Shown here piece by piece: positions 4,480 through 24,956 of a stretch of DNA of 64,000 nt; positions within the stretch are counted from its first letter, which is position 1; each line of letters begins with the position of its first letter. A program made the position numbers and the translations under genes. The stretch is from Monocercomonoides exilis PA203 (Eukaryota > Protista > Preaxostyla), in NCBI GenBank assembly GCA_001643675.2, contig LSRY02000073.1:51671-115670 (forward strand), in the 5' to 3' direction. Under the pieces are notes generated by a model, which did no database searches, was not told the origin of the DNA, and saw only the letters and a program-made list of their open reading frames with translations.

Positions 4480-5624
4480 GTATGTTAATTTTCATAGAAT
4501 GATTTGACTTCAGTCAAAGTGTGAAATTGTTATTTAATTTTTAAATAATTAATTAAGGTTTATTGATTGTGAATTGAGTGGATATTTTTGTTAAAAAAAT
4601 ATTGAATTATTGGAAAAGGTTTTATCCTTTTCGAAGCATAATTTTTTCAAAAATTGTTTGTTTTTATCGAAAAAAAAAATAAAATAAAAATAAAAATAAA
4701 AAAAAGTGCTGGGCACTGACTGACCCGAGCCCACCTTCTTCAAAATGATGCAGATGTTTATTGTGAATAACTCTGGGTAACACATTGACTTCCAACGTGA
4801 ACTTCATGATTTTTGATTGACGTGACAAAAAAATCCACGTCACAAGAGTTATCCGAAAGATTTTTATATATGATTAATAATTTTTAAAAAATTTATCAAA
4901 AAGAGGTTTTTATCAATTTGCATATGTTATTTTTTTAAAAAGTGATTATTATATTTGAAATCATATTTCTTTTGTCAAAATTTTCGATTTGTTTATTTGT
5001 TTTGAATACTCACAAAAGAACACAAAAAAACTAAAGATCTATTTAATGACTCCTCTTCAATATTTTTCCAAGTCAAACAATAGCTTTTGAAACGATAAAT
5101 GAACATTTGAATTGGAAAGAAAATAATAAATCAAATGACAATGAATTATCATTAAAACAAACACCCCGAAAAAAGTTATTATCTAAAAAATTATCATCCA
5201 TGTTTTTATTGAGTTCAAACAATGTGAATTAATGATCAAAATTGTATTCTCCTGCGAAATATGAAAATAAGTGAGGAATTTTCAAAATAGAGAAATATTG
5301 ATTCAAAATAAATTAATTAATCCAGAAATTTTTATTTTTTGACTGTGAAAAGTGACATCACAAGTTATCACGAGCAGATACTCCCAAAAAATAGTTGTAA
5401 AAAATCATTCTCATATATCTGATCCTTTTTGAAATCATTCTTTCATTCCAGTTTGAACAAAAACTATATCTTAGTGAGATTTCGAAAATTTGAACTAAAA
5501 CTGTTAATACATATTGTTTATGACGTTATTGTTGTTAAAACAAATTTTGACAAAAATCCCATAGAGATTGAATTATTGATCAAAACTTGAATGAAAGAAT
5601 GGTTTCAAAAAAAATCAGCCATAT

Positions 5625-8600
5625 GGGTAATTATTTTTGGGATCGTAAAAAATTTCGATGTCATTGAAAATTTTATCTTTGCTATTTTTGCCTTTTTCTA
5701 ATTTTCAATTATATTGTTTTAATATCCATGAAATTTCTAACCGTGAGATTGTTAAAAATTCGGAAATTGTTCCATGTTTACAAAAACATCTTTGAAGGAA
5801 TACTTAATTCGTTATGGGACAGATCAACAGTTTTTCAATCTTTTCACTTCTCAACAGAGAAAATGAATCCACACAAGTTACGCAATTCTCTGTTCCTGTG
5901 CTCATCAGCCACGCTCACCATTGACAGATTCGAGTTTTGGAACAGCAGCAGCTTAAATGTTGAGTACAGGATCATTTACGTAACAAATGGGAAAGCTGAA
6001 TTGAATGGATGCAAAATGAAGGACTTTGTAATGGGAAATGCTGAGATTATTGCACTTGACGGAAACGATGCTGAGTGTTCAATTGAAGGAATGGAAATGT
6101 CAAAGCTGAGCAGAGAAGGAGAAGGATCACTGCCTTTGGTTGCGAGAGGGAAAATTTTGGAGGTTGAGAACAGCGGCATTGAGAATTCAACAATGCTCAA
6201 CAGCAGCCACATTACAATTAATCCACTTGCAAATGGTCTTCTGAAGAATGTGACATTTACAAATCAGAGCAGAACAAACAGTAATTGAGGAGTGATAATG
6301 GGCGAATTGTGTGCTGGCGAGGTGTTGAGTGTGGAGAACTGCTCATTTATTCGCTGTATTTGCTATTCTGGGAGAACGATTGGAGGGTGCGTGCTGATGG
6401 ATGTAAAAGAAAATGGCGCATTCCGATTCGAGAGAACCAAAGTGGAGTTCTGCATTGTGTCCAGCGGAGATGGATTTAGCAGAGGGCTGTTCCTCACATT
6501 CACCTCTTCACACGTCGATTACTCGATGAGGAACAACACGTTCGAGAACAAAAGCAATGATATTTTGAAGAAATGGAAAGTTCGAGCTGGTTGAAGGAAG
6601 TCGCTCAACCACCCTTTCATTTTCCAAGCTTTGCTTTGTGCTTCCATCGTCTCCCAATCCTTCACCTGAAATGAGTTCTCTTATTGAAGATAGCATTGGT
6701 CAATGCTCATTCTTAGATTGCACATTTGAACAAGGAAGCAGCAGTAATTCCAACCCTTCGAAATGGATTGTTTCAGGAGGTGGAGGAGTTGTTCACTTTG
6801 ACTCCTGCACTTTCAGCAATATTCCATTTCAGACAGCTGGGGTTGTTTTTATTGATGGAGCATCGCTTTTGTTGGAGGCCTGCAGCTTTTCTTCTATCTC
6901 TTCTGACGCACGAAAGGGTTTGATAACTGGAAGCGGGAATTGCGATATAACGCTGAAGGATACAGGATTTGCGAATTGCGAGACGACAAATGGACATGTG
7001 TTGGAGATGACTCGACCGAAGTCTGTTGAAATCTCAGGGGCATGCACATTCGAAGGATGCACTTCGACAGAAGGGGATGGAGAGGCTCTTTATTGTTTTC
7101 TGGAGAGAGAAGGATCTTTGACTATGAACAAAACATCAATTGTGTCTTGTGAAGTGAATCAGATTAATGGGAGAGGAGGCGGAATCTATCTCGATTTGAG
7201 GGAGAATGTCAATGTCTATTTATTTTCTGATTTAACATTCAGCGGAAATGAGGCGTTTGAAGGGAAAGACATGTTTGTGAGAAGCGCTGATTTGAACGCG
7301 TCAATCATTCCATCTCTGTTTGATTTCGAGTATTTTGGAGCAGACGGAGAGACAAAAGTCGATCTGAAAGGAAGAGATGAAACACATTTTATGAGCGCAT
7401 CTGCGGATCTGCTGTATTTTTTGGTGAAATATTCTTCATCGACAATAAGCGTTGGATCGGCTGGAATCGACTTTATCTGGTGTGAAAAGGCAGAAACACC
7501 TTGTCACTCGTTGTGGTGGGGCATCAACAACTTGCAAGCAATTGAAGACTCGCAGTCGTGCTTTGTTGAAATTCTGGATGAAGTGGCAATATGCGAGCGC
7601 TATGAATTTGTCCTTTCTCAGCTCAGCATTGGATTGCCTGCCGCAGCTGCTTCACCTGCATTTTCCGAACTGTCGATTTCTCAAACAACAGACGGCTCGA
7701 GCCAGTAGATTTTCAGCTCGAATAATTCGCTTTCGTTTTGTTCTGTGCAGTTCCATCTGCCTGCGTTCTTCTCAAATGGACAGTCTTCTGTTGTTTCATC
7801 GTCTGACGGATATCTCACCTTCAACTCAACCTCGTTCCATTCGGATGCCACTTCTGCGCTGGAATATGTTCTGCTGTCGAACAAAGGAGGAACAGCTGAG
7901 CTGCTGAATGTGTCTGTTTCTTCGTTAGTGTTTGCACGCTTCCCCTTCGCGCTTTCGTCTTATGTCACGCTCGAGGAGTGCTGCTTTCACAGCATTTGCT
8001 CTCCCACAGGCACAGATGGCGGTGCAATGTCTGTCTGTCTGGAGCGATCAGACCTGCTGCGCGTGAAGAGCTGCCGAGCTAAGCTGTGCAAATGCTCCAC
8101 AGGAAGAGGCATAGGAGGGTTTTTATATGCAGATTGCTCGAAATCGACAGCAACAGCACCACTACGATTTGAAGGTGAAATGGCGTTTGAGAGAAATGAT
8201 GCGCAGCTAGGCAAAAACATATTTATTGCATCTACTGAATTGATCTCGTCAGTCTCTTTGGCAATGTTTGCCTTCTCATTCGAGGCAATGAAGGGCGACA
8301 GCAACGCATTTGTGGGGATTGAAGGAGAAAGCGAAGAACTGGATTTATTCAGATATTTGGTTTCTTATTCCTCGGCTTCAATTTTTCTATCGGAAGACGG
8401 AGAGGATGCGATGAGACATGGAAGCACAGATGATCCATGCTGCTCGTTCTGGAAAGGGATGCAGCAGATCAGCAACGAGGCCTTGCCAAAGCTCATTTCC
8501 ATTACCAAATCCACTGAAGTTGCCAACACCTTCACTCTCTCCAACTTCACCATCTAATCAAACTCATTGGAAGAAGAAGAAAAACGGGAGTCGAAGCTTC

Positions 8601-8989
8601 TGTTTATAGAAAAGGCAGGAGAAGTATCTGAGCCGTTTTTGTATGAGAAGGCGAGCTTTCGTTGAAGCTTATAACACTTGTAATTGTATCATCCTTCAAC
8701 AATTCGGCAACAGCTTTGGTTCAGTGCGAGGATGGGGTGCTGAGTCTGGCGCAGTGTGTGTTTGGAACAGAAGCAGGGCTTGGTGGAATGCGGCAGAGCA
8801 GGTGCAGTTTTGTTGTCTGCTTGAAAGGGAAACTTTCACTTGTAGATGTGTCAGTGGAGTCGACCAGCATCGCGAAAAGCGCAATTATAATAGGCGCAGG
8901 TGTTTGTGAGCTCAAGAACTTCACATGCTCGTTTGTAAACATTTCAGATGGGAGCATCTTCGAGGTTATTGAAGATGATGAACAACAAA
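5625..8989 (+). repeat. Left giant TIR
   Basis: Reverse complement of 13383-16747. Identity ends after GATGATGAACAACAAA. Confidence 0.95.
5860..8989 (+). pseudogene. Captured, disrupted Cys-rich beta-helix (pectin-lyase/Pmp-like) surface protein gene, copy 1
   Basis: Consecutive ORFs 5728-6288, 6292-6594, 6638-7708, 7745-8557 and 8662-9006 carry GGG(I/A)Y, F..C and C....PC motifs like the intact 24957 gene. Broken by stops and frameshifts. Confidence 0.75.
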
Positions 8990-9566
8990 AGAGATACTTA
9001 TATTGAACGTAATGAAAACGTTTTATTTGAAAATTTTTGTTGATTTATTGTATTTTTTTGTGATATTTTCTTTTCATCTATACGTGCAAGAAAAAACAAA
9101 AATGCTTGTTTTCTATTTTGGAAAGAAGATTTATATGTAATTCTTCGTGGAGAACAATTTTCATCTTTTTAGAATCATCACATTTGTTAATTGCTACAAT
9201 TTCGAAACTTCGTGGAATTGGTTTTTTTATTCAATTTGTTCTGCCTCTTAAATGTGATGATCCATAAATTGTGTTTCATGATTGTGAAAATGTATTTCTT
9301 TTGCGTGAGAAGATTTTGAAATAACTTTCAAATTAATTTTTCAGAACATATTTTTCACTTTTGATATCTGCTAATTATCTGATAATATCTGTTTCATTTC
9401 AGTATGAAAACATATTCATATAAATATTGTTCACACTCCAATTCTTATAATTTTAACTCTTTGTGAAAGCAAAAGAGTGAATTATCCATTATTTTTTTTT
9501 CGTGCAACCATAAGTATTTATTTGCATATTTGTCAAACTGAATCGACTTTTCTTCATTAATATTTA

Positions 9567-12500
9567 ATGAAAATAACAACTTCTTTATCAACATTGTCAA
9601 CTCAAGCTAATAAGGCTTGGAAAATCATCAGGCAAATCGGTGCAAACAATTTGGATGAGCTGATTTCTTATCTTCTTTACAACTTTAAAATATTCAAACA
9701 CGCCATGCATGAAGTTAAAAAAATCAATCAACAGTGTGATATCTTTTTTGCTATGCATGCATAATAAGCATTTGTCAAATAATCATTGTTTCTTATTTGA
9801 ATGATAATACTTTTTTTAAATAAGTATACGATGTTGCTAACGGATCTGACACAGTTTATGGAAAAGCTCCACTGCATAGACAAACTATGATCTTTCAAGC
9901 TTATGTTCGTAATTTATCGATAAAAGAAATTATGAAATTCTGTTTCAACGTTACACAAGGAAAAGTGAGCCACGCATAGAGAGTGCTGGAAAAAAATCAT
10001 GGAATTGTTACATACGCTTTATCTCCGACTCTTCCCCGAAGCAAAAGAGGTTTTTTTATTAATTTTTTTCATTATTAAAAAATTATTAAACTTTTATTTT
10101 TAGGATTGAGACACAAAGAATGGGAATTAGGGAACAATTGGATGCTTTCCAATTCAAGTGAAGCATCAACTTCCATGCATTTAACGAGCAAACAAAAGAA
10201 AAAAGAATGTTTTGATAAGCATTTCAATGAAGAGGAGTGGGACAAAGACATTTGTATTAATGATCAAAACAGAGAAATGAACGAAAAAGAAAAAATGTTC
10301 AATCCCACAGATCTACAGCCTTATTGTTCTCCTTTGCTTTTCAGTTTTTCTTCAAGAGGAAAACAGTCTTTGTGTGAAAACTGCAAAGATACAACGTCCA
10401 ATTTTAATCAAATATCAAGTAACATGACTACATTGAAAGCTTCTGATAATCCAACACACTCAAAAGGAATGAAAAATTTAGGGAATACGTGTTGCTTATC
10501 TTCATTGTTACAATGCCTATCTGCTGCATTACCACATCGTGAAAACGAAATTACAAAAATGGAACAAAAGACTCAATTATCATCCAAAATATTACAAATT
10601 TGCTATGAAATTCAAAAAGTGAATGGATTCTCCTTCAGTTGGAACAATGAATTTGTAGATCAATGGGAACAATGTTGTTGTTATGAAGCAAGACAACCTC
10701 AAAACATTTCGGATGCCTATACGAAAATGACTAATATTTTACTATGAAATAGTTGTATTCAAAAAAGAGACTTCATTTTTCCCACATCGTATTCTTCTAA
10801 ATGTTGTTCATGTGGGGAGGAGTCAATTCAACAAAACGATGAAACATTTGTGAAAGTAATTTACAGTTTTTCTCCCTGCAAAGGTTTGAGAAAAGAATTC
10901 ACTACAGAAATGTTGGACGATTCAAACAGAATTTTTTTTGTTCAACCTGCAAAAAACATTCAAGTGTAATCCGAAACTTGTTTTGTAATTCATTTCCTTC
11001 AGTTATTGCACTGTCTCATGAAAAATGTTCAGATATCAGCAACACTCCAGAGCTTTCATTAATAATATTTTCTGATACCAAAATACACAAAAGTTCAGTT
11101 GTGTATCATCAGAGAGAAAAATTCTCAATTGAAAATGAGAATTGCGGAAGAGTTGTTAAATACGATCTTGTTGGAGTAATTTAACACAAACCATTGCAGA
11201 ATATTTCTGGACATTATGTGGCTCTTGTTCGTCGAACAAACAGTATGAACTCAACATAGCAATTATGTGACGACTTTGATATTGACAATTTCGAAGAGAA
11301 AAAACTAATTGAAAAATGGAAGTCATTATTAACAGATGGGTTTTAGCCATCTTTATCAATTTACAAGAAAAATAAAGTTGGAAATGAAACTTTGAAAATG
11401 ACTAAAGGAGGAGTTGACACTTCAATCACTCATGAAAATATTTCTGTGACTAATTCCAAGTCTTTCAAAGAAGCAGTTCTTGGGGCCATGCAAAGATCCT
11501 CACATTTTACAGAGAAAATGACTACACAAGAAAGAAGCTCTTCACTATCTCCTTCAATGGTTCAAAGATAAGAAGGTGTTCGAGTTTTCTCTCCATTTCA
11601 GAAAAGACTCATTTTCAAGCCAAAAAACCAACTTTGGAAAGAATTTATGGGACAAACGGGAATAGAAATGTCGTTGTCACAATTCTATAAAATGACTGTT
11701 CAATTTTGCAAAGCAAAGAGAAGAACTGACATGTGTAAATTATGCAACATGCTTGAACAAATCGAAAACAAGAGGAAAACTCTTAATCAAGGTGGAAAGC
11801 TTCAAAAAGACGAAGAAATTGCTCACAGGCTTTTGAAAAAACATCAGGTGTTTGCTCATTGGCAACGTGATCATTTCAATAACAGTTTATCTTCTTTAAA
11901 AGAAAGTGAGGTGATTTGTCTTTTTGATTTTAAAGAGAAGTGGAGGACACCGATAACAGCGACTCAGGTTCAAGATGATTTTTACAGCTATCGTCAAGTT
12001 TCTCACTTTGCAATAATCACTTTTCAGAAGAGAAATTGTGTTTTCAACAAAAAAATTTACAACTTTTTGTCTGATAATCCAAACAATGATCATACTTTCA
12101 TTATCAACTGTCTAACATCTGTGTTGTCCAGATCAGCTTACAAACATACAAAAATGTTTAAGTTTTTTTGTGATTCAGGAGCTCACAACAAAAACAAATT
12201 TGTTCTGAACTTTCTTCTCTCTCACAAAACAACTTTCTTCCGAAACTCAAAACGCGAAGTTAGCTTCTTTGCGGAACACCATGGCAAGAATCTTTGCGAT
12301 GGAGAGTTTGGAATGCTTGTCAATATTATTCGGAATCATTTATCAAACGAAAAACTTGAAAGTGCATCTGATTTAATCACATTTTTCCAAAAGAATGCAA
12401 ACTCATTTTCTTCTTCATCTTTGAAAAAATCACAATTGCACTTGTCATCAGATTCAATCGCTACTGAAAAAATGAAGAAGAATAACTCTTATAACACAAT

Positions 12501-12840
12501 CGTTCAGAGATTTTTCGAAGAATACATATCAACAAACAACAATTCATATTCCTCTTTAATCATTCCGCATCTCAGAGATTATTTATATTTTGAAAGTCGA
12601 GGAACAAGCATATGCGGATCTGCTGTTAGCTTTATTCCTCAGCGTTTATTAATAGCTCTTGAATTTTCCATCAAGAAGGAGAAAGTGAAATCACAAAGGA
12701 TTGTTTCACAAAAACAACAAGAATCGCAATGTTTGAATTTTTCAAGTTTTTCAAATAGCATGCTTAAAAGAAGGTGCAATCTTGTTCGAGATTCGTCTGC
12801 ATTTTCGTCTCCAATCAATGATGACTTTTTTATTGATTAA
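9567..12840 (+). pseudogene. Intron-containing fusion gene: HTH-like region + USP (peptidase C19) domain + Sola-like DDD transposase; disrupted
   Basis: Cys box GMKNLGNTCCLSSLLQCL; Zn-finger KCCSCG and FCSTCK; His box YDLVGVI*H...SGHYVALVR...LCDD. The same frame runs into DMCKLC, LFDFKEK, FCDSGAHNKN and FFAEHHGKNLCDGEFG. GT-AG intron 10050-10103 joins exons in frame. Stops at 9977, 10745, 11182, 11257, 11344 and 11569, and a frameshift in the T-run ~10932-10939. Confidence 0.75.
11647..12840 (+). CDS. Intact 397-aa transposase catalytic ORF (RNase H-like DDD, Sola-like)
   Basis: Candidate catalytic Asp codons at 11926, 12172 and 12298. HGK..DG motif and upstream CxxC. Superfamily call is from recalled motifs, not a search. 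Confidence 0.7.
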   Translation: MGQTGIEMSLSQFYKMTVQFCKAKRRTDMCKLCNMLEQIENKRKTLNQGGKLQKDEEIAHRLLKKHQVFAHWQRDHFNNSLSSLKESEVICLFDFKEKWRTPITATQVQDDFYSYRQVSHFAIITFQKRNCVFNKKIYNFLSDNPNNDHTFIINCLTSVLSRSAYKHTKMFKFFCDSGAHNKNKFVLNFLLSHKTTFFRNSKREVSFFAEHHGKNLCDGEFGMLVNIIRNHLSNEKLESASDLITFFQKNANSFSSSSLKKSQLHLSSDSIATEKMKKNNSYNTIVQRFFEEYISTNNNSYSSLIIPHLRDYLYFESRGTSICGSAVSFIPQRLLIALEFSIKKEKVKSQRIVSQKQQESQCLNFSSFSNSMLKRRCNLVRDSSAFSSPINDDFFID

Positions 12841-13319
12841 TAAGCTCATTTTTGCGTATGCTTAGCTTTCATTCTGTTGGAAGAATGTGAGACAAGATAT
12901 CACACAATAGAAAAAACAACTGATCGTTGTTTTTTCCGGACCTGGATACGGTGTGATATTTCCCAGGTGCGCATATATGAAGTTCAACATGCTTATTATT
13001 AATAGATTGTCTTTTTGATATCTGATCGATTTACGTGATCAACAAACTTTCCTTGTTGAAAACAATTCAGTTTCTGATAATGATCTTTACACTTTTTTTC
13101 ATATTTGTTGAAAATATGAATTAATATAAGACTTAAATGAACATGTTTAATTTTTTCCAATGATATTCATTTATTTCAAGAATAAAAGTGAAAATGAAAC
13201 TTCAAGAATCATGATTTTATTATTTCTTAACTAGAAAACATTAAGGAATTCATCCAATTAACAATTAAATTCTTTTCACATGTGACAGTCGAAATTAAAA
13301 ACAGATTTTTGTTCGATTT

Positions 13320-16300
13320 CACAAACCATCATGAATAACTCGTTTTCATTCATCTTTCATTATTTTCATTCATTCGCGCATATTTGTTGTTCATCATCTT
13401 CAATAACCTCGAAGATGCTCCCATCTGAAATGTTTACAAACGAGCATGTGAAGTTCTTGAGCTCACAAACACCTGCGCCTATTATAATTGCGCTTTTCGC
13501 GATGCTGGTCGACTCCACTGACACATCTACAAGTGAAAGTTTCCCTTTCAAGCAGACAACAAAACTGCACCTGCTCTGCCGCATTCCACCAAGCCCTGCT
13601 TCTGTTCCAAACACACACTGCGCCAGACTCAGCACCCCATCCTCGCACTGAACCAAAGCTGTTGCCGAATTGTTGAAGGATGATACAATTACAAGTGTTA
13701 TAAGCTTCAACGAAAGCTCGCCTTCTCATACAAAAACGGCTCAGATACTTCTCCTGCCTTTTCTATAAACAGAAGCTTCGACTCCCGTTTTTCTTCTTCT
13801 TCCAATGAGTTTGATTAGATGGTGAAGTTGGAGAGAGTGAAGGTGTTGGCAACTTCAGTGGATTTGGTAATGGAAATGAGCTTTGGCAAGGCCTCGTTGC
13901 TGATCTGCTGCATCCCTTTCCAGAACGAGCAGCATGGATCATCTGTGCTTCCATGTCTCATCGCATCCTCTCCGTCTTCCGATAGAAAAATTGAAGCCGA
14001 GGAATAAGAAACCAAATATCTGAATAAATCCAGTTCTTCGCTTTCTCCTTCAATCCCCACAAATGCGTTGCTGTCGCCCTTCATTGCCTCGAATGAGAAG
14101 GCAAACATTGCCAAAGAGACTGACGAGATCAATTCAGTAGATGCAATAAATATGTTTTTGCCTAGCTGCGCATCATTTCTCTCAAACGCCATTTCACCTT
14201 CAAATCGTAGTGGTGCTGTTGCTGTCGATTTCGAGCAATCTGCATATAAAAACCCTCCTATGCCTCTTCCTGTGGAGCATTTGCACAGCTTAGCTCGGCA
14301 GCTCTTCACGCGCAGCAGGTCTGATCGCTCCAGACAGACAGACATTGCACCGCCATCTGTGCCTGTGGGAGAGCAAATGCTGTGAAAGCAGCACTCCTCG
14401 AGCGTGACATAAGACGAAAGCGCGAAGGGGAAGCGTGCAAACACTAACGAAGAAACAGACACATTCAGCAGCTCAGCTGTTCCTCCTTTGTTCGACAGCA
14501 GAACATATTCCAGCGCAGAAGTGGCATCCGAATGGAACGAGGTTGAGTTGAAGGTGAGATATCCGTCAGACGATGAAACAACAGAAGACTGTCCATTTGA
14601 GAAGAACGCAGGCAGATGGAACTGCACAGAACAAAACGAAAGCGAATTATTCGAGCTGAAAATCTACTGGCTCGAGCCGTCTGTTGTTTGAGAAATCGAC
14701 AGTTCGGAAAATGCAGGTGAAGCAGCTGCGGCAGGCAATCCAATGCTGAGCTGAGAAAGGACAAATTCATAGCGCTCGCATATTGCCACTTCATCCAGAA
14801 TTTCAACAAAGCACGACTGCGAGTCTTCAATTGCTTGCAAGTTGTTGATGCCCCACCACAACGAGTGACAAGGTGTTTCTGCCTTTTCACACCAGATAAA
14901 GTCGATTCCAGCCGATCCAACGCTTATTGTCGATGAAGAATATTTCACCAAAAAATACAGCAGATCCGCAGATGCGCTCATAAAATGTGTTTCATCTCTT
15001 CCTTTCAGATCGACTTTTGTCTCTCCGTCTGCTCCAAAATACTCGAAATCAAACAGAGATGGAATGATTGACGCGTTCAAATCAGCGCTTCTCACAAACA
15101 TGTCTTTCCCTTCAAACGCCTCATTTCCGCTGAATGTTAAATCAGAAAATAAATAGACATTGACATTCTCCCTCAAATCGAGATAGATTCCGCCTCCTCT
15201 CCCATTAATCTGATTCACTTCACAAGACACAATTGATGTTTTGTTCATAGTCAAAGATCCTTCTCTCTCCAGAAAACAATAAAGAGCCTCTCCATCCCCT
15301 TCTGTCGAAGTGCATCCTTCGAATGTGCATGCCCCTGAGATTTCAACAGACTTCGGTCGAGTCATCTCCAACACATGTCCATTTGTCGTCTCGCAATTCG
15401 CAAATCCTGTATCCTTCAGCGTTATATCGCAATTCCCGCTTCCAGTTATCAAACCCTTTCGTGCGTCAGAAGAGATAGAAGAAAAGCTGCAGGCCTCCAA
15501 CAAAAGCGATGCTCCATCAATAAAAACAACCCCAGCTGTCTGAAATGGAATATTGCTGAAAGTGCAGGAGTCAAAGTGAACAACTCCTCCACCTCCTGAA
15601 ACAATCCATTTCGAAGGGTTGGAATTACTGCTGCTTCCTTGTTCAAATGTGCAATCTAAGAATGAGCATTGACCAATGCTATCTTCAATAAGAGAACTCA
15701 TTTCAGGTGAAGGATTGGGAGACGATGGAAGCACAAAGCAAAGCTTGGAAAATGAAAGGGTGGTTGAGCGACTTCCTTCAACCAGCTCGAACTTTCCATT
15801 TCTTCAAAATATCATTGCTTTTGTTCTCGAACGTGTTGTTCCTCATCGAGTAATCGACGTGTGAAGAGGTGAATGTGAGGAACAGCCCTCTGCTAAATCC
15901 ATCTCCGCTGGACACAATGCAGAACTCCACTTTGGTTCTCTCGAATCGGAATGCGCCATTTTCTTTTACATCCATCAGCACGCACCCTCCAATCGTTCTC
16001 CCAGAATAGCAAATACAGCGAATAAATGAGCAGTTCTCCACACTCAACACCTCGCCAGCACACAATTCGCCCATTATCACTCCTCAATTACTGTTTGTTC
16101 TGCTCTGATTTGTAAATGTCACATTCTTCAGAAGACCATTTGCAAGTGGATTAATTGTAATGTGGCTGCTGTTGAGCATTGTTGAATTCTCAATGCCGCT
16201 GTTCTCAACCTCCAAAATTTTCCCTCTCGCAACCAAAGGCAGTGATCCTTCTCCTTCTCTGCTCAGCTTTGACATTTCCATTCCTTCAATTGAACACTCA

Positions 16301-16512
16301 GCATCGTTTCCGTCAAGTGCAATAATCTCAGCATTTCCCATTACAAAGTCCTTCATTTTGCATCCATTCAATTCAGCTTTCCCATTTGTTACGTAAATGA
16401 TCCTGTACTCAACATTTAAGCTGCTGCTGTTCCAAAACTCGAATCTGTCAATGGTGAGCGTGGCTGATGAGCACAGGAACAGAGAATTGCGTAACTTGTG
16501 TGGATTCATTTT
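13320..16512 (-). pseudogene. Captured surface protein pseudogene, copy 2
   Basis: Mirror of copy 1. Coding-like sequence continues a short way past the TIR boundary (QQICANE), so this is probably the original copy. Confidence 0.75.
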
Positions 16513-16747
16513 CTCTGTTGAGAAGTGAAAAGATTGAAAAACTGTTGATCTGTCCCATAACGAATTAAGTATTCCTTCAAAGATGTTTTTGTAAACATGG
16601 AACAATTTCCGAATTTTTAACAATCTCACGGTTAGAAATTTCATGGATATTAAAACAATATAATTGAAAATTAGAAAAAGGCAAAAATAGCAAAGATAAA
16701 ATTTTCAATGACATCGAAATTTTTTACGATCCCAAAAATAATTACCC
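13383..16747 (-). repeat. Right giant TIR
   Basis: Reverse complement of 5625-8989. Confidence 0.95.
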
Positions 16748-17035
16748 AAATTCTCTCTTTCTCAATTGAGGAGAATATGAGTCTTATTCTTTTTTTATGG
16801 TTGCAACAGTTTTTTTTTGTTTTATCTGAACATCTCTTTAATTTTTTCAGTCTTCACTTCAAGCTTTTTATTTATCTCCAAAAGGCCATCCATTTAGTGA
16901 ATAAAATATTGTATGATGTTTGCCTTTTCTATGGCAGAGTTTTAAGTGCACATCTCAAAAATTGTGAAAAACAATGTGGTTTTCAATTAAAGCATAAAAA
17001 CGGACGTTTGTGACTTTTCAAAAAGATTGACATAT

Positions 17036-20000
17036 GTGTCATTATTTTTCATATCGTAACTTTGTTCGAAGAAAGATCTTTATTTTAATAATTGTGGTAT
17101 GTTGAATTTAAAGTTAAAATATATGTTAATAAAAGCAGTGCTAAAAAATCTTGAATGAATATATAAACAAAATGGAGAATTTAAGGATATTTAGAAAATT
17201 CCATTATAATAATAATTTATACAAGAATTTTTATCATTACAATAATTTGACATCACGATGCCCAGCAAGTTCAGTTATTGCTTAAAGAAGATAATAATTT
17301 AAGTATGCTGAATGAAATAATTTTTTTATTGATTACAATTACATATCATCTGAATTTAAATGATGAATTCATTTATCATATTTTTATGTGAAAAAGCAAA
17401 TTTGATATTTTCATAGGTTAATATTTTAAGACCTTGTAAAAGTTTTGAACAACGCATATTCGATTAAGGATGATTAAGGAGGTTGAAGAGAAGTGATTAC
17501 ATTGAAAGTTGAAAGATAGAAATGAAATGAAGATAATTGAGGCAGAAAATGTGAACAACAAAGTTGAAGATGAATGATTTAATGACGATGAAAATATCGT
17601 TTTTTTTTGGAATAATTAGAATACTCTAATGTTTCATCAATTTTTTTCTTTTTTTTGTTGTATTTCAAAATTGTTTCCTTTCGAACATTTTCTTCATAAG
17701 TTTTTTTGAAGTATTAATTATTTTTGAAATGTGAACCTCATAAATGTGATTTTATTATGAGTATGTTCGAAAATTTTTAGAGATCATTTTAAACTTGAAA
17801 CATTTGAACATTGGAATTGAAAATAAAAAAACAAAAATTTTTAAAGTCTCATTAAACATTTGATTTTCTTTTGTGATTTCAATTTTTCTATTTCAATTGA
17901 TCTGCGAATTGGTGAAATGCAGAAAAAGTGAGAAAAAACAAGTGAACTCAATGAAAGCTAAAAAAAGTCACTTTCATACTGCTTTGCTTCATTTCGTTCA
18001 TCAACAGAATGCAAGTTCTAGACTGAATAGAAAGATATATACCGATCACATGTTCATTTTTCTGGTTTATTAAAACCGAAAACAAAAGAAAAACATATTT
18101 TGAGTTTGATTCATTTTTATTGGAAACACATTGCTGGAATAGATCATCAAATTAAATCACGTCCGTGAAGTAATCAATGAATAAATTCGTCAAACGAGAT
18201 TCTTCTGCTTATCTCTGATCATTCTTGCACGATATTATCTCTTGTATTTTTGACAGAACTCTCACATCCACCAAATTCCACTTCTCTTTTCCTTTTGCCT
18301 TGCATCTGCAATTTCTTCTTTTCAACTTTCTTCTTCTTTCATTCATCAATTTCATTCTTTTCTTATATATTCGACAAAGCGCTCCCTTTCATTCACGAGG
18401 ACTGAAATCTTCTGTGTCCCTATCTCGATCGTTGCCTCCTCGCTTTGATGATTCCCTTCCATCAGAGTGATTGCCAAGCTAATCTGCACCTCACACATCT
18501 CAAAGGCCTTCTTCACCGTCAGACAAGGAAATGTTTCATTTGCCCCACACGGATCATTCAGGACATTTCCACTCACTGAAACGAATATCGTCTTGTCCTT
18601 CAGCCAATCCTTCTTTTCCGTGTGCTGATAATACCAGCTGCTCCCAGTATAATGGTAGGCATAGCACATTCTCTTCTCATCTGTATTCGTTGTATAGCAT
18701 TCTTTGAACGGATTTCCTGACTCAAAACAAAGACCGTAATAATCTGCATATTCAACATCATGTCCATATGGAGTATTGGCAGAGCATTTGCATTCATGAA
18801 AGAAAAGGAAATAACAATAGATTCCATCATCAGGTTCTGTTGGTCTGTTTGGATGCAATCTCAAACCTCCTCCATTTGCAGTTGCTGAACATTAAATAAA
18901 TTGAATGCTTATAATCTTATCTTGAATAGGAATTTTTTTCCAAAGCATACCACCACTGTCAGTGCTTGTAAGTGAACATGATTTTGGGCTGCAGTCAAAT
19001 ACTCACGCACTCTCCTTTCCCTCATTTTCTGCTTCAATACATCCTGTTCCTGAAACCTGAAAATTATCAAGATAAAGTCCTCCTCCCCAGCCATAAGAAG
19101 AACATCTCCGAAATTCACATCCGCTGATTCGAGTGCATGCTGAAGTTGTATAAACACATATCCATCCTCCAATCCATGTTCGAGCAGTGCATGAGTCGAA
19201 TGTGTTATTTGTAATATCAGCAGATTTGATGTTGTAGCGAAGAATGCCTCCTCCAGAATAATACGCTTCTCATCCACTGAACGAATAGCATTTCACTGAA
19301 AGAATTCCAGACGATAAGCTGAACACGCAAATTGCTCCACCATAAGAATCATCATCAGCGTTTTAATTTTTATTCCCTTCTACATTTGATCCATTCCATT
19401 CGCACCAAATAAACGAATTTGCTCCATTATCCGTTTCGTTCTGTCTGTCTGGCTTCAATGGTACCTCTGCAGTTCCTTCACATTCAACATTCCTTGTCCG
19501 GCAGCATCCAATGAATGATGTGTTTGAGGCAGTCAAGGAATCCAAGGGGTTGTTGAGAGAGGGAACAATCCCACCATCATATGCATCACACACTGACGAA
19601 AATGAGCAACTATTCATAAAACTTGATGCTTGTGATAATGTAGTTGTTGAAGGTGAACATGCCTCATTTGCTGTTGAGATATTGAAAAATGATAATTTGG
19701 AGAGGGACATAAGGGGAATGGAAGGTGACGAGAGGAATGGGGCTGATGAGATACAAAAAGAGGAAAAACTCGATTCTGCCACAAAAATGTTCACATCAAT
19801 GCATTTTCTGTCTTCTTCTCTTTCTCCCGCTCTTCCTCCTTCTTCATCTCTTCCCCTTCCCTATCCTCCTATTCCTCCTCCACATTCTCTTTCACTCCTA
19901 ATCTGTCACATCTTTCCCTCCCCTCTTTAAAAACCTCCCAAAATTCATCTCTCCTTCTCAACCACGTCTATTCAATGAAATATTTATCAAAGTCCCAATA

Positions 20001-21069
20001 AGCGTTAATCTTTATCCGCTTCTTTCTGAAATTTAATAAATGAATATTGTAGTTAATGTATTAAAAAACCTTTTCTCAGCCAATACCTTATATAAAGAAT
20101 GATCCCATCAAGCTCTTTTCCAAGCTGATTCCGCTGATTGACCTTAACTTTCAATCGTTTGATGAAATTTCACTCCCTTGAAGTTTTGCAAAAACTCCAG
20201 CAAAAATGCTTTTGTTCTTACAAATAAAAAGAAAGACTTTACATCATATTTCAAAATGTGTCGAATAAAATCACAATTAAAAATTTCAGACCTTTATTCT
20301 CCTTTTATTTTGTCAACTTTTGTCTTGAAATCTCCGCTTTTCTCACCTCCTCTTCTCTTCCATCATCTATGTAAAAAGAAAAGCATATTGCATTTCCCAT
20401 TCTTAAAGAAACAGTTTTTAATTAATATTCTGAGGTGAAATCATATCTTCTTCAAGATAATGCCGAAATGTTCAGAAACCAAAGCATGAAAAAATCTTGT
20501 TTCAATTATGAAAAAACAACCATTCAAGCTTTCAAATCCATATTATCCTCTTCACCTCTTCTGCCTCAATTATCTTCATTTCATTTCTATCTTTCAACTT
20601 TCAATGTAATCACTTCTCTTCAACCTCCTTAATCATCCTTAATCGAATATGCGTTGTTCAAAACTTTTACAAGGTCTTAAAATATTAACCTATGAAAATA
20701 TCAAATTTGCTTTTTCACATAAAAATATGATAAATGAATTCATCATTTAAATTCAGATGATATGTAATTGTAATCAATAAAAAAATATTTCATTCAGCAT
20801 ACTTAAATTATTATCTTCTTTAAGCAATAACTGAACTTGCTGGGCATCGTGATGTCAAATTATTGTAATGATAAAAATTCTTGTATAAATTATTATTATA
20901 ATGGAATTTTCTAAATATCCTTAAATTCTCCATTTTGTTTATATATTCATTCAAGATTTTTTAGCACTGCTTTTATTAACATATATTTTAACTTTAAATT
21001 CAACATACCACAATTATTAAAATAAAGATCTTTCTTCGAACAAAGTTACGATATGAAAAATAATGACCC
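17036..21069. mobile_element. Non-autonomous Pack-type element with ~512-bp TIRs and ATAT target duplication
   Basis: 17036-17547 is the reverse complement of 20559-21069 (about one indel). Ends GTGTCATTATTTTT...AAAAATAATGACCC, with ATAT at 17032-35 and 21070-73. Confidence 0.85.
18300..20640 (-). pseudogene. Disrupted Cys/Ser-rich beta-helix surface protein family gene carried inside the element
   Basis: ORF pieces 19363-19794 (SSVCDAYDGGIVPSLNNP) and 18352-18864 (CGANETFPCLTVKKA), separated by frameshifts and stops. Confidence 0.7.
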
Positions 21070-21111
21070 ATATAAAAGTTAATGTTTTTTTAATTGAGTG
21101 TTTTTCAATTC

Positions 21112-21112
<1 letters not shown>

Positions 21113-21173
<61 letters not shown>
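21113..21173 (+). repeat. Poly(A) tract (~61 nt)
   Basis: Direct read. Confidence 0.95.
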
Positions 21174-21177: not shown

Positions 21178-21739
21178 TCGTATTTTTATCTACGAACAGA
21201 AAAAAGTGAATCAATCGTTTTCAAATTAGTTTGTTTTGTTATTCATCATTAATAATAACATTTTTTCAATTATTTAACATTGACATTAATACGTGAAATC
21301 ATTATTAGATTAAAAGAGGCCATATAAGAGATGATTATTGCAATGGGTGATAATATTAGTAATTAAAACTTATTTCGGAGTGTAAATTCTTCAATGGTTT
21401 TATTTCTTTAGTGAGGAATCATTCATTTGAAGAAAAAAAGCATGAAAATTGTTTCAAATGACAGTGTTTGAGCTTATATTTAGAAATAAATTATCTTTAA
21501 AAGGAGTCAAACAATTCGGAGTTAATTAACAAATTCTCAAATGAAAATTTCTTATCGTAAATTTTCGCAGAAAAAATAATATATACACAATTTATTATTC
21601 AATATTGATTCACTTTTTATTTGAAATTGGAAAACTTCTAATTCGAAATTAATGAAATTAAGAAAATTTAAGAAAAAAATTTCGACACAATAAAATCACT
21701 GGGTGAGAGTCGAAAAGTAATTAAAATGTTTTGTTTTTT

Positions 21740-22640
21740 CATTATTCTGCAAAAGGATGAAAAATTGAACCCTGATTTTTATTTCTTGTGAATAAAGATG
21801 AAATTTTTTGATTTTTCAGAAAAAAGTCATCACAATGGAAATAGGATAATTTTCTTATGAATTAACCTCTCATTGTTTGATAATACATCATTCAATCAAG
21901 AAAAGTTATTTGCATCAATTCTACAAAATGAATACATGAATTAATTTTCTGTGAATGAACCTTTTTATGCACTTTTAGGATTCATCATTTGTTTAATTGA
22001 TCTTCTGAATATATATATATATATGTAACTTTTCTTGATTGAATGATGTGTTATTAAATAATGTGAGGTTAATTCATTTGAAAATTATCCGATTTCGTGG
22101 ATAATGATTTTTTACTGAAAAATCAGAAATTCTCATGTTTATTCCAAATACAGTCGAAATCGGATATAAAAACATCGGTTTTTGCACAACTTTTTGTGAC
22201 TATATCCGATTGTGATTATACACGATGAAACTTTACACAGATAAAAATCATAAAAAATTTATAGATAAATTTAATTTTTTGGTTGAAATTTTCATTTTTG
22301 AAAATTCTTTTCAACTACTCGTTTTTCTGATTCATATACAATTTTTTTCATTAATGCACATTATTGAGACTTTTTCGAGAGCATTTTTGAAAAAGCGATA
22401 AATTGAAATTTTTTGATGAAATAATCGATTTTTTATGGAAAATATTACATAAAAAAATAAAAAATGTGATTGGATATTTTCAGTCCTGTGAATAAATGAG
22501 ATGGAAAATGAATGAAAAACAAGCAAAAAATGTCGGTGCATCGAAAGAAGTGACAATAAATGAATGTGATTATATTCGACGTGATTATATCCGGTATATA
22601 CTGTAATTAAAATTTGGGTTCAAATTCTCATATATATTCC
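21740..22640. mobile_element. Older imperfect foldback interrupted by a MITE
   Basis: 21790-21908 pairs with 22026-22144. Pairing resumes after 22605 (GGGTTCAAATT vs AATTGAACCC at 21763). Confidence 0.6.
22151..22603. mobile_element. Tc1/pogo-type MITE with TA duplication
   Basis: TA|CAGTCGAAATCGGATATAA ... TTATATCCGGTATATACTG|TA, with internal GTGATTATATCCG-like repeats. Confidence 0.75.
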
Positions 22641-22739
22641 GAATATTGAGAGAATATAATATTTTCAATATTTTTTGATATACAGCCAAAAACTAGTTTT
22701 TCACAAAAATTTTTTTTCAAAAAAAACTCATTTTTATTA

Positions 22740-22960
22740 ATTATGAATAAGAAGTTTAATAATTTCGAATAATAAGTTCATTAATTTTGAATAATAAATT
22801 AAACAATTTTGAATAATAAGTTTATTAAATTTGAATAAGACACTAAAAATAATTCTATATCAAAAAATAGAAATTTATTTTCGGAAAAAAACAATTCAAA
22901 TTCGGAATAAATATTTCTATTTCGAAAAAGAATAATTCGATTTCGAAATTCATTTTCAAC
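22740..22960. repeat. Degenerate ~20-bp AT-rich tandem repeat (TTT[C/T]GAATAATAAG)
   Basis: GAATAATAA[G/A]TT units recur several times. Confidence 0.55.
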
Positions 22961-23887
22961 TGAAATTTTTAATTTTTTTTTGATGGATTTCGGAAAATGT
23001 CAAGTTAATTTTTCACCAGTTAAATATAAAAACTCTAAAAAAACCGTTTTTTTAAATTGAAACAATCAATAAATCAATTTTTTGAAAAATAATTTTTTGA
23101 AAAAAAATCATCACTCTGATGAAAAATTAATAGCAAATAATTCAATATTTTAAATATCGTTTAGGAAATAGTGAATTTTCAATCACATTTATTGAATTTC
23201 AAAAGACTAGAATTTTTTGCCAATAAAATTTTTTGTTTCATTAGTAAAATTTTTAAAAATTTCGATTTTTCAAAAATGAAAATGAATTCATTTTCTTTTC
23301 GAATTAACTTCAAATTATAATATTTTCAATTAAAATGAAACAATTTTTTAAAAAGGAAATGCATCATTTATTAAATATTCAAGAACAAAGTGTGCTCGCA
23401 AGATGAAAATCAAGAGCATTTTTACAACAAAACGTAAGTTATTAATATCACAAAACAAAAAAAATATTCATTTCGAAATCAAATTAATTATTTGAAAATT
23501 TGAATTATAATTTCCGAAATCGAACTATTTTTTTTCGGAATAGAATTATTTTTGGTGCAAATGGTGAAAAAAAAATCACTTGAATCAGAATAAGTTTTAA
23601 ACGATTGTGATTTTTTCGGTCAAATAAATATTACTCCATATTTGAGACGATAATATCTGCTTTTTGAATAATGTTCCACACAATGCATTCAAAGTTTTTT
23701 CTATACAGATATCGCACAAAATCCAGTTGGAATCTCTCCAATTGTTTTGAACTGATCAGGGTTAAACATTGGTACTGATAAGGAAGAGCTGCAACCCATG
23801 AACTTCGTCAATAATTACAAAAATATTTTAACTTTTGTGTCATCCAGAATTTGTTTTGTTGCAATTCGTTTATTTTATAATTCATAT

Positions 23888-24126
23888 GGGTTATTCTTTT
23901 TGAAAAGTCGCAAATGTTTAATTTTCAAATAAATCAAAACTTTTATATTTTTCTCGAATTTTTGTTAACATTCACCAAATTCACTGATGTGGAATCTATT
24001 ACTTGATAATGCTATTTCATGAATTCTTGGGAAGATTCGTAAGCGGGAACAGAAATTTTGGCAAAATATGAATATTTTGATTTATTTGAAAATTTAACAT
24101 TTGCGACTTTTCAAAAAGAATAACCC
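23888..24126. mobile_element. 239-bp MITE of the GGGT.ATT/ATAT family
   Basis: ATAT|GGGTTATTCTTTTTGAAAAGTCGCAAATGTT ... AACATTTGCGACTTTTCAAAAAGAATAACCC|ATAT. Confidence 0.9.
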
Positions 24127-24956
24127 ATATATCAAAATCGAAAGATAAAACAAATATAACAAATTGAGCTTCAAAGGCGAAAACAAATTTGACTGTAACA
24201 TTTTCTTTTTTCTTTTCTTTTAAATATTTGATATATTTTTTATGTACTTAAAGAAATACTTTGTGCTAATTGAATTTCAATATCAGAAAATAAAAGAAAA
24301 TAATTTTTATAAATAGTCTTCAATTTACAGATTGTACAAAAAATACCGGACAAGATCGATTTCGCAAAAACCTCAATAATAATACAGTTTGCACAAAAAA
24401 TACAGGACATCGCAAAAAATACCGGACAAGATCGATATCTCAATAACCGCAAGAAGAAAAATTCTGATAATTTTCCTCAAAATATATCTCATCAATACTA
24501 ATTCATTTGAAATATAAAACTTTCAAAATATCTTTATTTGTGCTCAGAAAAAATTATTTATTAAAATCTCGGAGAAACATGATTTTGAGTTTCTCCGAAA
24601 TTTCAAAAATAATTTTTTCTGAGCATTACCGAGGAAGTTTTGAAAGTCTCGTTTATCATTTGAGTTTGTATTAACGAGATGTATTTTGAGGAAAATTAAC
24701 AAAATTATTCCTCTTTCGGTTATTGTTAAATGCATCTTGTCCGGTAATTTATGCGATATTTGTTCCTTTAAATTTTTCTTAAGATTTTTTTTCATTTTAA
24801 TGTTAGGATTGTAATCATACGATTGAAGAAAAAATTTGGAATAAATCATTGATTATTTTATTAATCTAATAATTTTTCCTCGTTTTTTTTTCTTTGATAT
24901 TTTGATTTTATCATTTATATAATCATTGATCAAATATCTCATTTTCATTTCGGACA

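What the first reader, a model, noticed from the sequence alone, without database searches (positions are those of the whole stretch)
5621..24130. One terminal signature unites elements of 11 kb, 4 kb and 0.24 kb
Three foldbacks with different interiors share ends: ATAT-GGGTAATTATTTTT (5621), ATAT-GGGTCATTATTTTT (21073, minus strand; left end GTG variant) and ATAT-GGGTTATTCTTTTT (23884). The 4240 MITE resembles the 23888 MITE. Inference: a transposase-bearing element, a gene-carrying non-autonomous element and MITEs form one family mobilised by the same enzyme with an ATAT target preference.
Basis: partly seen in the sequence, partly recalled or inferred. Interest (0 to 1): 0.8.

Follow-up and report, generated by a model that had tools for sequence, protein, structure and literature searches.

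The report
Sola2 transposon family sharing one end
Three inverted-repeat elements of 11 kb, 4 kb and 0.24 kb in this protist (Monocercomonoides exilis) subtelomere really do share one end sequence and a 4-base ATAT-type target duplication, because they belong to one large group of Sola2-type cut-and-paste transposons, an ordinary if previously undescribed family.

Summary
GGGTNATTNTTTTT ends all three elements and is a genome-wide terminus: 2,672 copies against 53 for the reversed control, and 472 exact inverted pairs 190-230 bp apart against 0.

The flanking 4-mers are true 4-bp target-site duplications. Of 50 MITEs read, 41 have identical flanks. Of those, 25 are ATAT and 14 are non-palindromic direct repeats (AAAT, ATTT, ACAT, AGTT and others). 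ATAA/ATAA, ATTA/ATTA and TTAT/TTAT show that the outer bases are duplicated too.

The 11-kb element carries a decayed gene centrally: a USP deubiquitinase domain plus a DDD transposase. The catalytic domain is homologous to the published Sola2 transposase Sola2_PPa-1 (hhalign 99.3%, E 2e-20). Sola2 elements are known for 4-bp AWWT duplications.

Corrections:
- The 11-kb element's right flank is AAAT, not ATAT.
- Its transposase gene is broken, here and in its only other copy.
- Its 3.4-kb arms are a 255-bp true terminus plus an internal fragment of a giant host gene.
- The 4-kb element belongs to a family of about 20 gene-fragment carriers.
- The abundant intact relatives of the transposase (over 100 copies) have different ends.

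"Mobilised by the same enzyme" therefore remains an inference. This is a new member of a known kind, of moderate interest.

The parts
5621..5624 (.). Left flank of E1, ATAT. It is also the right flank of the abutting degenerate MITE that ends at 5620.
5625..16747 (.). E1: an 11,123-bp Sola2-type element with GGGTAATTATTTTT at both ends. It has one sister copy in the genome, at C14:1091377-1103541.
5625..8989 (+). Left arm of E1 (the reported pair, which includes the flanking 4-mers, is 3,369 nt). 5625-5879 is the element's own terminal region. 5880-8951 is a captured internal fragment of a giant host gene of about 4,000 aa, 85-89% nt identical to paralogues on C36.
13383..16747 (-). Right arm of E1, the mirror image of the left arm. 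The captured fragment lies at 13421-16492 and the terminal region at 16493-16747.
10085..12840 (+). Decayed gene for a USP (UCH) deubiquitinase domain fused to a Sola2-type DDD transposase. It has a frameshift near 10936 and four in-frame stops between 11185 and 11646.
11647..12840 (+). Intact 397-aa ORF covering the catalytic domain. Motifs: RTD-C-x2-C, FDFKEKW (D94), FFCDSG (D176), HHGKNLCD (D218).
16748..16751 (.). Right flank of E1, AAAT. It differs by one base from the left flank.
17032..17035 (.). Left target-site duplication of E2, ATAT. It is shared with the remnant MITE-A end at 17031.
17036..21069 (.). E2: a 4,034-bp non-autonomous element with no transposase. Arms are 17036-17555 and 20551-21069 (99%). 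The left end has the GTGT variant. It belongs to a family with about 20 inverted pairs of 2-10 kb.
18352..19860 (-). E2 cargo: broken ORFs related to a second giant-gene family of about 3,000 aa. Homologous cargo occurs in most E2-family members.
21070..21073 (.). Right target-site duplication of E2, ATAT.
23884..24130 (.). Type-A MITE at 23888-24126 (239 bp), with ATAT duplications at 23884-23887 and 24127-24130.
1746..2005 (.). Degenerate type-B MITE of 260 bp. Its ends are TAGTGATT and GTGTGATT, with ATAT on both flanks.
4244..4479 (.). Diverged foldback related to type-A MITEs (66-71% identical). The terminal signature is lost.
4943..5201 (.). Degenerate type-B MITE, 77-81% identical over both ends.
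5409..5620 (.). Degenerate type-B-like MITE. Its right end (reverse complement GGCTGATTTTTTTTGAAACC) abuts the ATAT at E1's left end.
   Evidence: (I11)
16783..17031 (.). Probable remnant of a type-A MITE. Its right end ...GTGACTTTTCAAAAAGATTGAC abuts the ATAT at E2's left end. Only the 23-nt end is significant, so the left boundary is a guess.
   Evidence: (I12)

Best explanation
The region is a subtelomeric nest of one group of Sola2-superfamily cut-and-paste DNA transposons in Monocercomonoides exilis.

Members are defined by the terminus GGGTNATT(A/C)TTTTT. E1, E2 and type-B MITEs extend it to GGGTNATTATTTTTnnnATCrTA. They insert with a 4-bp staggered cut at A-W-W-T sites, mostly ATAT.

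- E1 is a formerly autonomous element. A USP-plus-Sola2-DDD-transposase gene sits centrally between the ends but is now broken.
- E1's arms grew to 3.4 kb by taking up an internal fragment of a giant host gene and duplicating it in inverted orientation. The whole structure then transposed at least once.
- E2 is a Pack-type, gene-fragment-carrying non-autonomous relative.
- The 239-bp element is a MITE.

Shown: the shared terminus, the 4-bp duplication and its ATAT bias, Sola2 homology of the linked protein, the host origin of the cargo, and the copy numbers.

Inferred:
- The E1-lineage transposase, or a close relative, recognised the shared 14-33 nt and moved all of these elements.
- Each insertion recreates ATAT at both borders, so later insertions land exactly at element borders and build the nest.
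- The near-identity of arms within a copy is kept up by gene conversion between the arms.
For: Terminus:
- 2,672 motif copies against 53 for the control.
- 472 inverted pairs against 0.
- In an alignment of 16 ends, 12 columns are invariant: G1, G3, T4, A6, T7, T8, T10-T14 and A18. E1, E2 and type B share more.

Target-site duplication:
- 41 of 50 MITEs have identical flanks. Of those, 25 are ATAT and 14 are non-palindromic direct repeats.
- ATAA/ATAA, ATTA/ATTA and TTAT/TTAT show that the outer bases are duplicated.
- E2-family copies have ATTT/ATTT twice and AGTT/AGTT once, plus six ATAT/ATAT.
- Background ATAT is 0.85% of 4-mers and ANNT 9.5%.

Transposase:
- A profile of the catalytic domain finds 1,287 proteins. 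One is P0103, at E 4e-24.
- P0103 is PPL_04538 of Heterostelium album.
- Long stretches of P0103 match, almost letter for letter, the 'Sola2_PPa-1' transposase printed in Additional file 3 of PMC3627910.
- hhalign gives 99.3% probability and E 2.3e-20 over 240 columns, including all three acidic motifs.
- Sola2 elements have 4-bp AWWT duplications such as ATAT, AAAT and ATTT (PMC3627910).

Linkage:
- E1's gene has no termini of its own inside E1.
- The sister copy on C14 has the same architecture, different flanking DNA and ATAT/ATAT.

Cargo:
- E1's arm from 5880 to 8951 is 85-89% identical to an internal part of open frames of about 4,100 aa on C36.
- E2-family cargo includes a myotubularin phosphatase fragment at E 1.6e-39.

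Abutting insertions share one ATAT at 5620/5621 and at 17031/17032.
Against: - Both E1 copies are broken. No intact transposase gene was found between GGGT ends.
- The only intact relatives number at least 104 scored hits out of 415 candidates, many with open frames of 1,000-1,430 aa. They are about 44% identical, and their defined 5' boundary reads ATAAAAATTCGATG, not GGGT.
- Linkage of the enzyme to the terminus therefore rests on one lineage of two copies.
- The 4-bp AWWT duplication is also the hallmark of Sola1 (PMC3845634), so the duplication alone does not name the enzyme.
- Type-A MITEs share only about 18 nt with E1 and E2.
- MITE copies are old: mean pairwise identity is 79% for type A. 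Current activity is not shown.
- The assembly is nanopore-based and was polished with short reads (PMC8767320). The 100% identity of the arms could be slightly overstated.
Confidence: 0.75

Rival explanations
1. The GGGT-ended elements are moved by a different, unlinked enzyme. Candidates are one of the abundant intact USP-Sola2 paralogues acting in trans, or a Sola1-type transposase elsewhere in the genome. On this reading the broken gene inside E1 is a passenger or a relic that never served these ends.
For: - Only two E1 copies exist and both are broken, yet there are hundreds of MITEs.
- More than 100 paralogues are intact.
- The AWWT duplication is also a Sola1 hallmark. A published insect Sola1 MITE terminus, GGACCGTTTATTTTGAAAGT, resembles the type-A end GGGTGATTCTTTTTGAAAAGT.
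Against: - The intact paralogues' own 5' boundary is unrelated to GGGT.
- E1's gene lies centrally with no termini of its own, and that arrangement is conserved in the sister copy.
- No Sola1 transposase could be sought, because no reference sequence was available to the tools.
Confidence: 0.2
2. The elements are Tc1/mariner- or Stowaway-like. On this reading the duplication is 2 bp (TA) and the repeats start TGGGT...ACCCA, so the apparent ATAT is half element and half target.
For: Most flanks read A-N-N-T. That reading gives the same sequence whether the duplication is 2 bp or 4 bp.
Against: - Copies with ATAA/ATAA, ATTA/ATTA and TTAT/TTAT duplicate the outer positions as well.
- The inner dinucleotide is often not TA: AAAT, ATTT, ACCT and AGTT all occur.
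- The linked protein is Sola2-like, not DDE_3 or Transposase_1.
Confidence: 0.02
3. The shared ends of E1 and E2 are incidental. Their long arms come from the genome's general tendency to form large palindromes, or from assembly artefacts, and not from transposon biology.
For: - Large inverted duplications are common. Some E2-family copies (L025, L033) and loci on C80 have flanks that are themselves inverted repeats.
- A main-family copy has 1.2-kb arms at 99.75% identity without recognisable ends.
- The assembly is nanopore-based.
Against: - E1 and its sister copy share the same junctions but lie in different flanking DNA, and the sister has a 4-bp ATAT duplication.
- E2-family members have perfect non-palindromic duplications.
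- The arms end exactly at the family terminus.
- Palindrome formation may well have built the arms, but the finished structures then transposed.
Confidence: 0.05

Closest known systems
Sola2 DNA transposons (Sola superfamily of Bao, Jurka & Kapitonov 2009; the DFa and PPa families of dictyostelids in Bao & Jurka 2013, PMC3627910)
   Same: - 4-bp AT-rich AWWT target duplications (ATAT, AAAT, ATTT).
- Terminal inverted repeats.
- A DDD transposase with the motifs RTD-C-x2-C, DFKE, (W/F)CD and HGK-x2-CD. The match to Sola2_PPa-1 is 28% identity over 240 columns, hhalign 99.3%.
- The dictyostelid elements also carry foreign cargo.
   Different: - The host is an oxymonad.
- The terminus GGGTNATTNTTTTT differs from the dictyostelid ends GAATATTTATTTCT and TGTTAAATTTT.
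- The transposase is fused to a USP deubiquitinase domain.
- Arms reach 3.4-3.7 kb, against a published TIR range of 11-1,124 bp (PMC10741241).
- There are very large MITE progeny.
Sola1 MITEs of insects (Sola1_NA of Bombyx and Rhodnius, PMC3845634)
   Same: - AWWT/AWDT 4-bp duplications.
- MITEs of 200-700 bp.
- The terminus GGACCGTTTATTTTGAAAGT resembles the type-A end here.
   Different: The enzyme linked here matches a Sola2 reference, not Sola1. The resemblance of the termini was judged by eye only.
Pack-MULEs and other Pack-type (transduplicating) non-autonomous elements. The comparison rests on established knowledge, not on a test here.
   Same: Host gene fragments are carried between the family's terminal repeats and are moved with a target duplication.
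   Different: - The superfamily is Sola2, not Mutator.
- In E1 the captured fragment is part of the inverted arms themselves.
Foldback-type elements with very long inverted arms (Drosophila FB and relatives; from established knowledge)
   Same: Kilobase-long, nearly identical inverted arms surround a short centre.
   Different: The arms here are not built of tandem subrepeats. They are a unique terminus plus a captured gene fragment, and a conventional DDD transposase gene sits in the centre.

Membership tests
Sola2 (Sola superfamily) | 4-bp target-site duplication | tested here: met
   41 of 50 MITEs have identical 4-mers, 14 of them non-palindromic direct repeats. The outer positions are duplicated in ATAA, ATTA and TTAT cases. 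E2-family copies have ATTT and AGTT duplications.
Sola2 (Sola superfamily) | AT-rich AWWT target preference | tested here: met
   ATAT makes up 25 of 50 duplications against a 0.85% background. A-N-N-T flanks both sides in 411 elements, against 472 strict-motif pairs counted without regard to flanks, and against a 9.5% background. The published Sola2 preference is AWWT.
Sola2 (Sola superfamily) | Encodes a DDD transposase homologous to reference Sola2 transposases | tested here: met
   HMMER E 4e-24 and hhalign 99.3% / E 2.3e-20 to P0103, which matches the published Sola2_PPa-1. The three acidic motifs align. No Sola1 or Sola3 references were available for contrast.
Sola2 (Sola superfamily) | The transposase gene lies between the family's terminal inverted repeats | tested here: met
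   This holds in E1 and in its C14 sister copy only. There are no nested termini around the gene.
Autonomous element | An intact transposase reading frame | tested here: not met
   The window copy has a frameshift near 10936 and four in-frame stops. The C14 copy has three stops in the catalytic domain.
MITE | Short (under 600 bp), non-coding, with terminal inverted repeats, a target duplication and high copy number | tested here: met
   The element is 239 bp with 83-nt arms and ATAT/ATAT flanks. At least 472 pairs of this size class exist genome-wide.
Pack-type (gene-fragment-carrying) non-autonomous element | Host gene fragments between family termini, without a transposase | tested here: met
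   E2 and its family give no transposase match. Cargo includes a giant-gene fragment, a myotubularin fragment and a collagen-like repeat. E1's arms hold an internal fragment of a C36 giant gene.
Tc1/mariner (Stowaway-like) | TA dinucleotide duplication | tested here: not met
   The duplications are 4 bp and often lack a central TA.
   Only sequence conservation of the outer 14-33 nt and physical linkage in two copies are available.

The most novel reading that the evidence does not exclude
The kilobase arms are not passive. On this reading, Sola2 elements in M. exilis rebuild one arm from the other through a foldback or hairpin intermediate during transposition or repair. That would keep the arms identical (100% and 99.95%) while copies drift 6-15% apart. 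It would also make these elements a standing mechanism for copying and scattering fragments of the giant surface-protein genes through subtelomeres.
Probability: 0.1. Interest if true: 0.7.

Novelty: new member of a known kind. Interest (0 to 1): 0.42.

Why it matters
About 35% of the M. exilis assembly is 'unclassified repeat', and its genome paper names no transposon families (PMC8767320). This work classifies part of that fraction. The motif marks about 2,700 element ends, covering two MITE families, a Pack-type family and a founder lineage, and all of these are tied to the rarely studied Sola2 group.

It gives a clean 4-bp ATAT target rule and a 14-nt end that can be used to annotate the genome. 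It also shows that fragments of the two giant gene families are carried and duplicated by transposons near chromosome ends. Apart from the USP fusion and the unusually long arms, it is ordinary transposon biology.

Tried and rejected
- Pfam found no transposase family in any E1 or E2 ORF. The top hits of the big search carry no Pfam family either.
- The word-based protein search found only two M. exilis paralogues.
- The ESM Atlas pointed to DUF7869 clusters. No Pfam scan confirmed this, and no paper mentions DUF7869.
- Bao et al. 2009 is not held. Additional file 10 of PMC3627910 is unreadable as stored. Additional file 3 served instead.
- I tried to define the termini and duplication of the abundant USP-Sola2 family. 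Only the 5' boundary was fixed. Twelve near-identical copies extend beyond it.
- The inverted gene-fragment pairs on C80, C53 and C71 are large palindromes, not GGGT-ended elements.
- The reading with a 2-bp TA duplication was considered and rejected.
- A nested-element origin for E1's gene was considered and rejected.
- No Sola1 or Sola3 reference sequence was available, so the contrast within the superfamily was not run.


Full report
**Source of the window**

The window is G000:C73:51671-115670, from a genome of 82.3 Mb in 101 contigs. Three facts match the nanopore assembly of Monocercomonoides exilis PA203, which has 101 contigs, 82.3 Mb and N50 1,379,369 (PMC8767320):
- Contig C17 is 1,379,369 bases long.
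- Contig C12 is 1,597,598 bases long. That equals the contig length recorded for the M. exilis protein P0001.
- The closest database proteins are M. exilis proteins.

The window is AT-rich eukaryotic DNA with GC-richer genes. A strongly G-skewed stretch at its far end fits a chromosome end.

**The observation**

- E1 has arms at 5621-8989 and 13383-16751, 3,369 nt with a single mismatch.
- E2 has arms at 17032-17555 and 20551-21073, 99% identical.
- The MITE has 83-nt arms at 23884-23966 and 24048-24130.

Without their flanking 4-mers the elements are 5625-16747, 17036-21069 and 23888-24126. Their ends read GGGTAATTATTTTT at both ends of E1. E2 has GTGTCATTATTTTT on the left and GGGTCATTATTTTT on the right. 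The MITE has GGGTTATTCTTTTT at both ends.

The motif is not a chance product of AT-rich DNA:
- In the window it occurs 8 times (1 mismatch allowed). Shuffles give 2.3, and none of 100 reaches 8.
- In the genome it occurs 2,672 times, against 53 for the same pattern read backwards.
- There are 472 exact inverted pairs 190-230 bp apart, against none for the control.

**The flanking 4-mers**

I read both flanks of 50 MITEs from the pattern listing.
- 41 have identical 4-mers on the two sides.
- 25 of those are ATAT.
- 16 are other 4-mers. Of these, 14 are non-palindromic and repeated in direct orientation: AAAT seven times, ATTT twice, and ACAT, AGTT, ACCT, ACTT and AAGT once each.

Had they been part of the inverted repeat, the right copy would be the reverse complement of the left.

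Because nearly all are A-N-N-T, a 2-bp duplication with ends T...A would give the same sequence. I therefore searched for copies whose outer positions depart from A...T on both sides and read them. ATAA/ATAA, ATTA/ATTA and TTAT/TTAT are perfect 4-bp duplications. The last sits inside a (TTTA)n microsatellite.

The duplication is therefore 4 bp. ATAT makes up 0.85% of 4-mers in the window and A-N-N-T 9.5%, so the target preference is strong.

For the three elements of the finding, E2 and the MITE have ATAT/ATAT. E1 has ATAT/AAAT. E1's sister copy has ATAT/ATAT.

**How far the ends are alike**

An alignment of 16 ends gives 12 invariant columns: G1, G3, T4, A6, T7, T8, T10-T14 and A18.
- E1, E2 and type-B MITEs (about 255 bp) also share ATC at 18-20 and TA at 22-23.
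- E2 and one end of type B continue alike to about position 33 (...ATCrTAACTTTkTTCG).
- Type-A MITEs (239-240 bp), to which the 23888 copy belongs, share only about the first 18 nt.

The GTG variant of E2's left end is not a private mutation. Among B/E-type ends with a non-G at position 2 there are 226 in the genome. Of the first 100 listed, about 72 are GTGT, 25 GAGT and 3 GCGT. The left end of the C14 copy of E1 and one end of the MITE at 1746-2005 carry GTGT as well.

**What E1 is**

The outer 255 nt (5625-5879) are the element's own. Only four places in the genome match its terminal 280 nt, and these are the two ends of two elements.

From 5880 to 8951 the arm is 85-89% identical to an internal part of open frames of about 4,100 aa on contig C36. 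Those frames belong to a giant-gene family with thousands of candidate matches.

The 4.4-kb centre holds one gene, at about 10085-12840. It is collinear from the first to the last residue with single ORFs of 1,000-1,430 aa found in at least 104 other places, out of 415 candidates. In the intact copies Pfam finds a USP/UCH deubiquitinase domain well above threshold: 53, 43 and 55 bits against a cut-off of 23.9.

In the window the gene has a frameshift near 10936 and four in-frame stops. Only the last 397 codons (11647-12840) are open.

The other copy, C14:1091377-1103541, has these features:
- It is 85-94% identical to the window copy.
- It has arms of 3,709 nt at 99.95% identity.
- It lies in unrelated flanking DNA.
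- It has an ATAT/ATAT duplication.
- It has three stops in the catalytic domain.

The long-armed structure therefore existed before the two copies separated and moved as a unit. It is not an assembly artefact.

No inverted repeats or termini of the abundant family surround the gene inside E1, so the gene is not a nested insertion.

**What the enzyme is**

Eight catalytic domains align with invariant motifs: RTD-C-x2-C, FDFKEKW, FFCD-G-HN-N and EHHGKN-CD-EFG.

A profile search of 1.8 billion representative proteins found 1,287 relatives at E up to 0.001. One of them, P0103 at E 4e-24, is PPL_04538 of Heterostelium album (Polysphondylium pallidum) PN500. Long stretches of its sequence match, almost letter for letter, the 'Sola2_PPa-1' transposase printed in Additional file 3 of Bao & Jurka 2013.

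A profile-sequence comparison gives 99.3% probability, E 2.3e-20, 240 aligned columns and 28% identity. The three acidic motifs are in register.

The same paper reports 4-bp AT-rich AWWT duplications (ATAT, AAAT, ATTT) for Sola2 elements. The protein and the insertion signature thus agree on Sola2. The oxymonad Blattamonas nauphoetae has a relative too (P0047).

**What E2 and the MITEs are**

E2's arm sequence has 41 matches in the genome, mostly at 69-73% identity. Most form inverted pairs 2-10 kb apart.

Twelve copies were read:
- All full-length ends read GGGT(C/T)ATT(A/T)TTTTTC(A/T)TATC(G/A)(T/A)AACTTTGTTCGAAGAAAGAT(C/T).
- Six have ATAT/ATAT duplications.
- Two have ATTT/ATTT and one has AGTT/AGTT.
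- Two (L025, L033) lie inside larger palindromes. One (L035) has a truncated right end.

None encodes the transposase. Their interiors differ. Cargo includes a myotubularin phosphatase fragment (E 1.6e-39), a collagen-like repeat, a nested DDE_1 transposase and a DUF5906/VapE-like ORF. Most share a fragment of a second giant-gene family of about 3,000 aa, as the window copy does. These are gene-fragment carriers of the Pack type.

Type-A MITE copies average 79% pairwise identity, so the family is not young.

**The neighbourhood**

Probing the window with representative copies found five more degenerate members: 1746-2005, 4244-4479, 4943-5201, 5409-5620 and probably 16783-17031. That makes eight members in 22 kb.

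Two of them end exactly at the ATAT that flanks E1 (5620/5621) and E2 (17031/17032). A tandem case was also seen elsewhere (L004). An element that duplicates ATAT offers the preferred target again at both of its borders, and this would explain such abutting insertions. That explanation is an inference.

**What remains open**

The claim that one enzyme moves all of these rests on the shared outer 14-33 nt and on the linkage of a Sola2 gene to GGGT ends in two broken copies.

The abundant intact paralogues are only about 44% identical to E1's protein. Their 5' boundary is fixed at ATAAAAATTCGATG, the point where many diverged copies begin. It is unrelated to GGGT.

A Sola1-type enzyme cannot be excluded. 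AWWT is also the Sola1 hallmark, and a published insect Sola1 MITE end looks somewhat like the type-A end. I had no Sola1 reference sequence to search with.

Arm identity within copies (100% and 99.95%) against 6-15% divergence between copies suggests gene conversion between arms. Short-read polishing of a nanopore assembly could inflate that identity slightly.

**Verdict**

It needs correcting in detail, and its central mechanistic claim is untested.

Earlier notes of this scan on the same stretch proposed a Sola-like element with captured-gene arms and a USP fusion. I tested those readings here and they hold.

This is a new member of a known kind (Sola2). It has two unusual traits, very long captured-gene arms and a USP-fused transposase, and it has clear use for annotating this genome.

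Noticed in passing
G000 genome-wide; examples L019:2591-5881, L020:2636-6922, L018:3734-7621: At least 104 scored copies (415 candidates) of a single-ORF gene of 1,000-1,430 aa fuse a bona fide USP/UCH deubiquitinase domain (Pfam 43-55 bits) to the Sola2 catalytic domain. Many copies are intact, and their terminal 300 nt are 95-99% identical, which suggests recent activity.
   Followed up: partly
window 5625-8989 vs 13383-16747; C14 copy; L019 arms: Arms within one element are 99.75-100% identical over 1.2-3.7 kb, while sister elements differ by 6-15%. This suggests concerted evolution of the arms, or their regeneration.
   Followed up: partly
G000 C80:1.15-1.85 Mb, C53, C71 (e.g. L052): Dozens of inverted pairs about 5 kb apart hold 5' fragments of the ~3,000-aa gene family. 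L052 is a large palindrome whose two arms contain mirrored MITEs. No GGGT ends bound these structures.
   Followed up: partly
genome-wide: At position 2 of the terminus, G to T (GTGT) is about three times as common as G to A and about 24 times as common as G to C. This is not what neutral decay would give.
   Followed up: partly
window 21117-21173: A run of about 57 A lies 45 nt to the right of E2. It could be the tail of a retroposed sequence or a microsatellite.
   Followed up: no
window 21790-22144, 24409-24757, 21589-22800, 22841-23557: There are further foldbacks, with arms of 87-157 nt at 70-84% identity, that lack the GGGT signature. They are presumably other MITE families.
   Followed up: no
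L040:2946-4850 (C36:1032831-1042830): A 635-aa ORF with DUF5906 and VapE-like primase-helicase domains lies inside a 10-kb E2-family pair. It may be a nested virus-like or Polinton-like element.
   Followed up: no
L028:4192-5400: A pogo-like DDE_1 transposase ORF (E 1.9e-16) is nested inside an E2-family element.
   Followed up: no
window 60001-64000: GC skew is 0.97-1.0, so almost no C lies on the + strand. This fits telomeric repeats at the contig end. Earlier notes of the scan place rDNA and the telomere here.
   Followed up: no
G000; C36:1347098, C36:1295708 and thousands of candidates: Two giant-gene families have single open frames of about 4,000 aa (4,731 candidate matches) and about 3,000 aa (1,256 candidates). 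Pfam found no family in the fragments scanned.
   Followed up: partly
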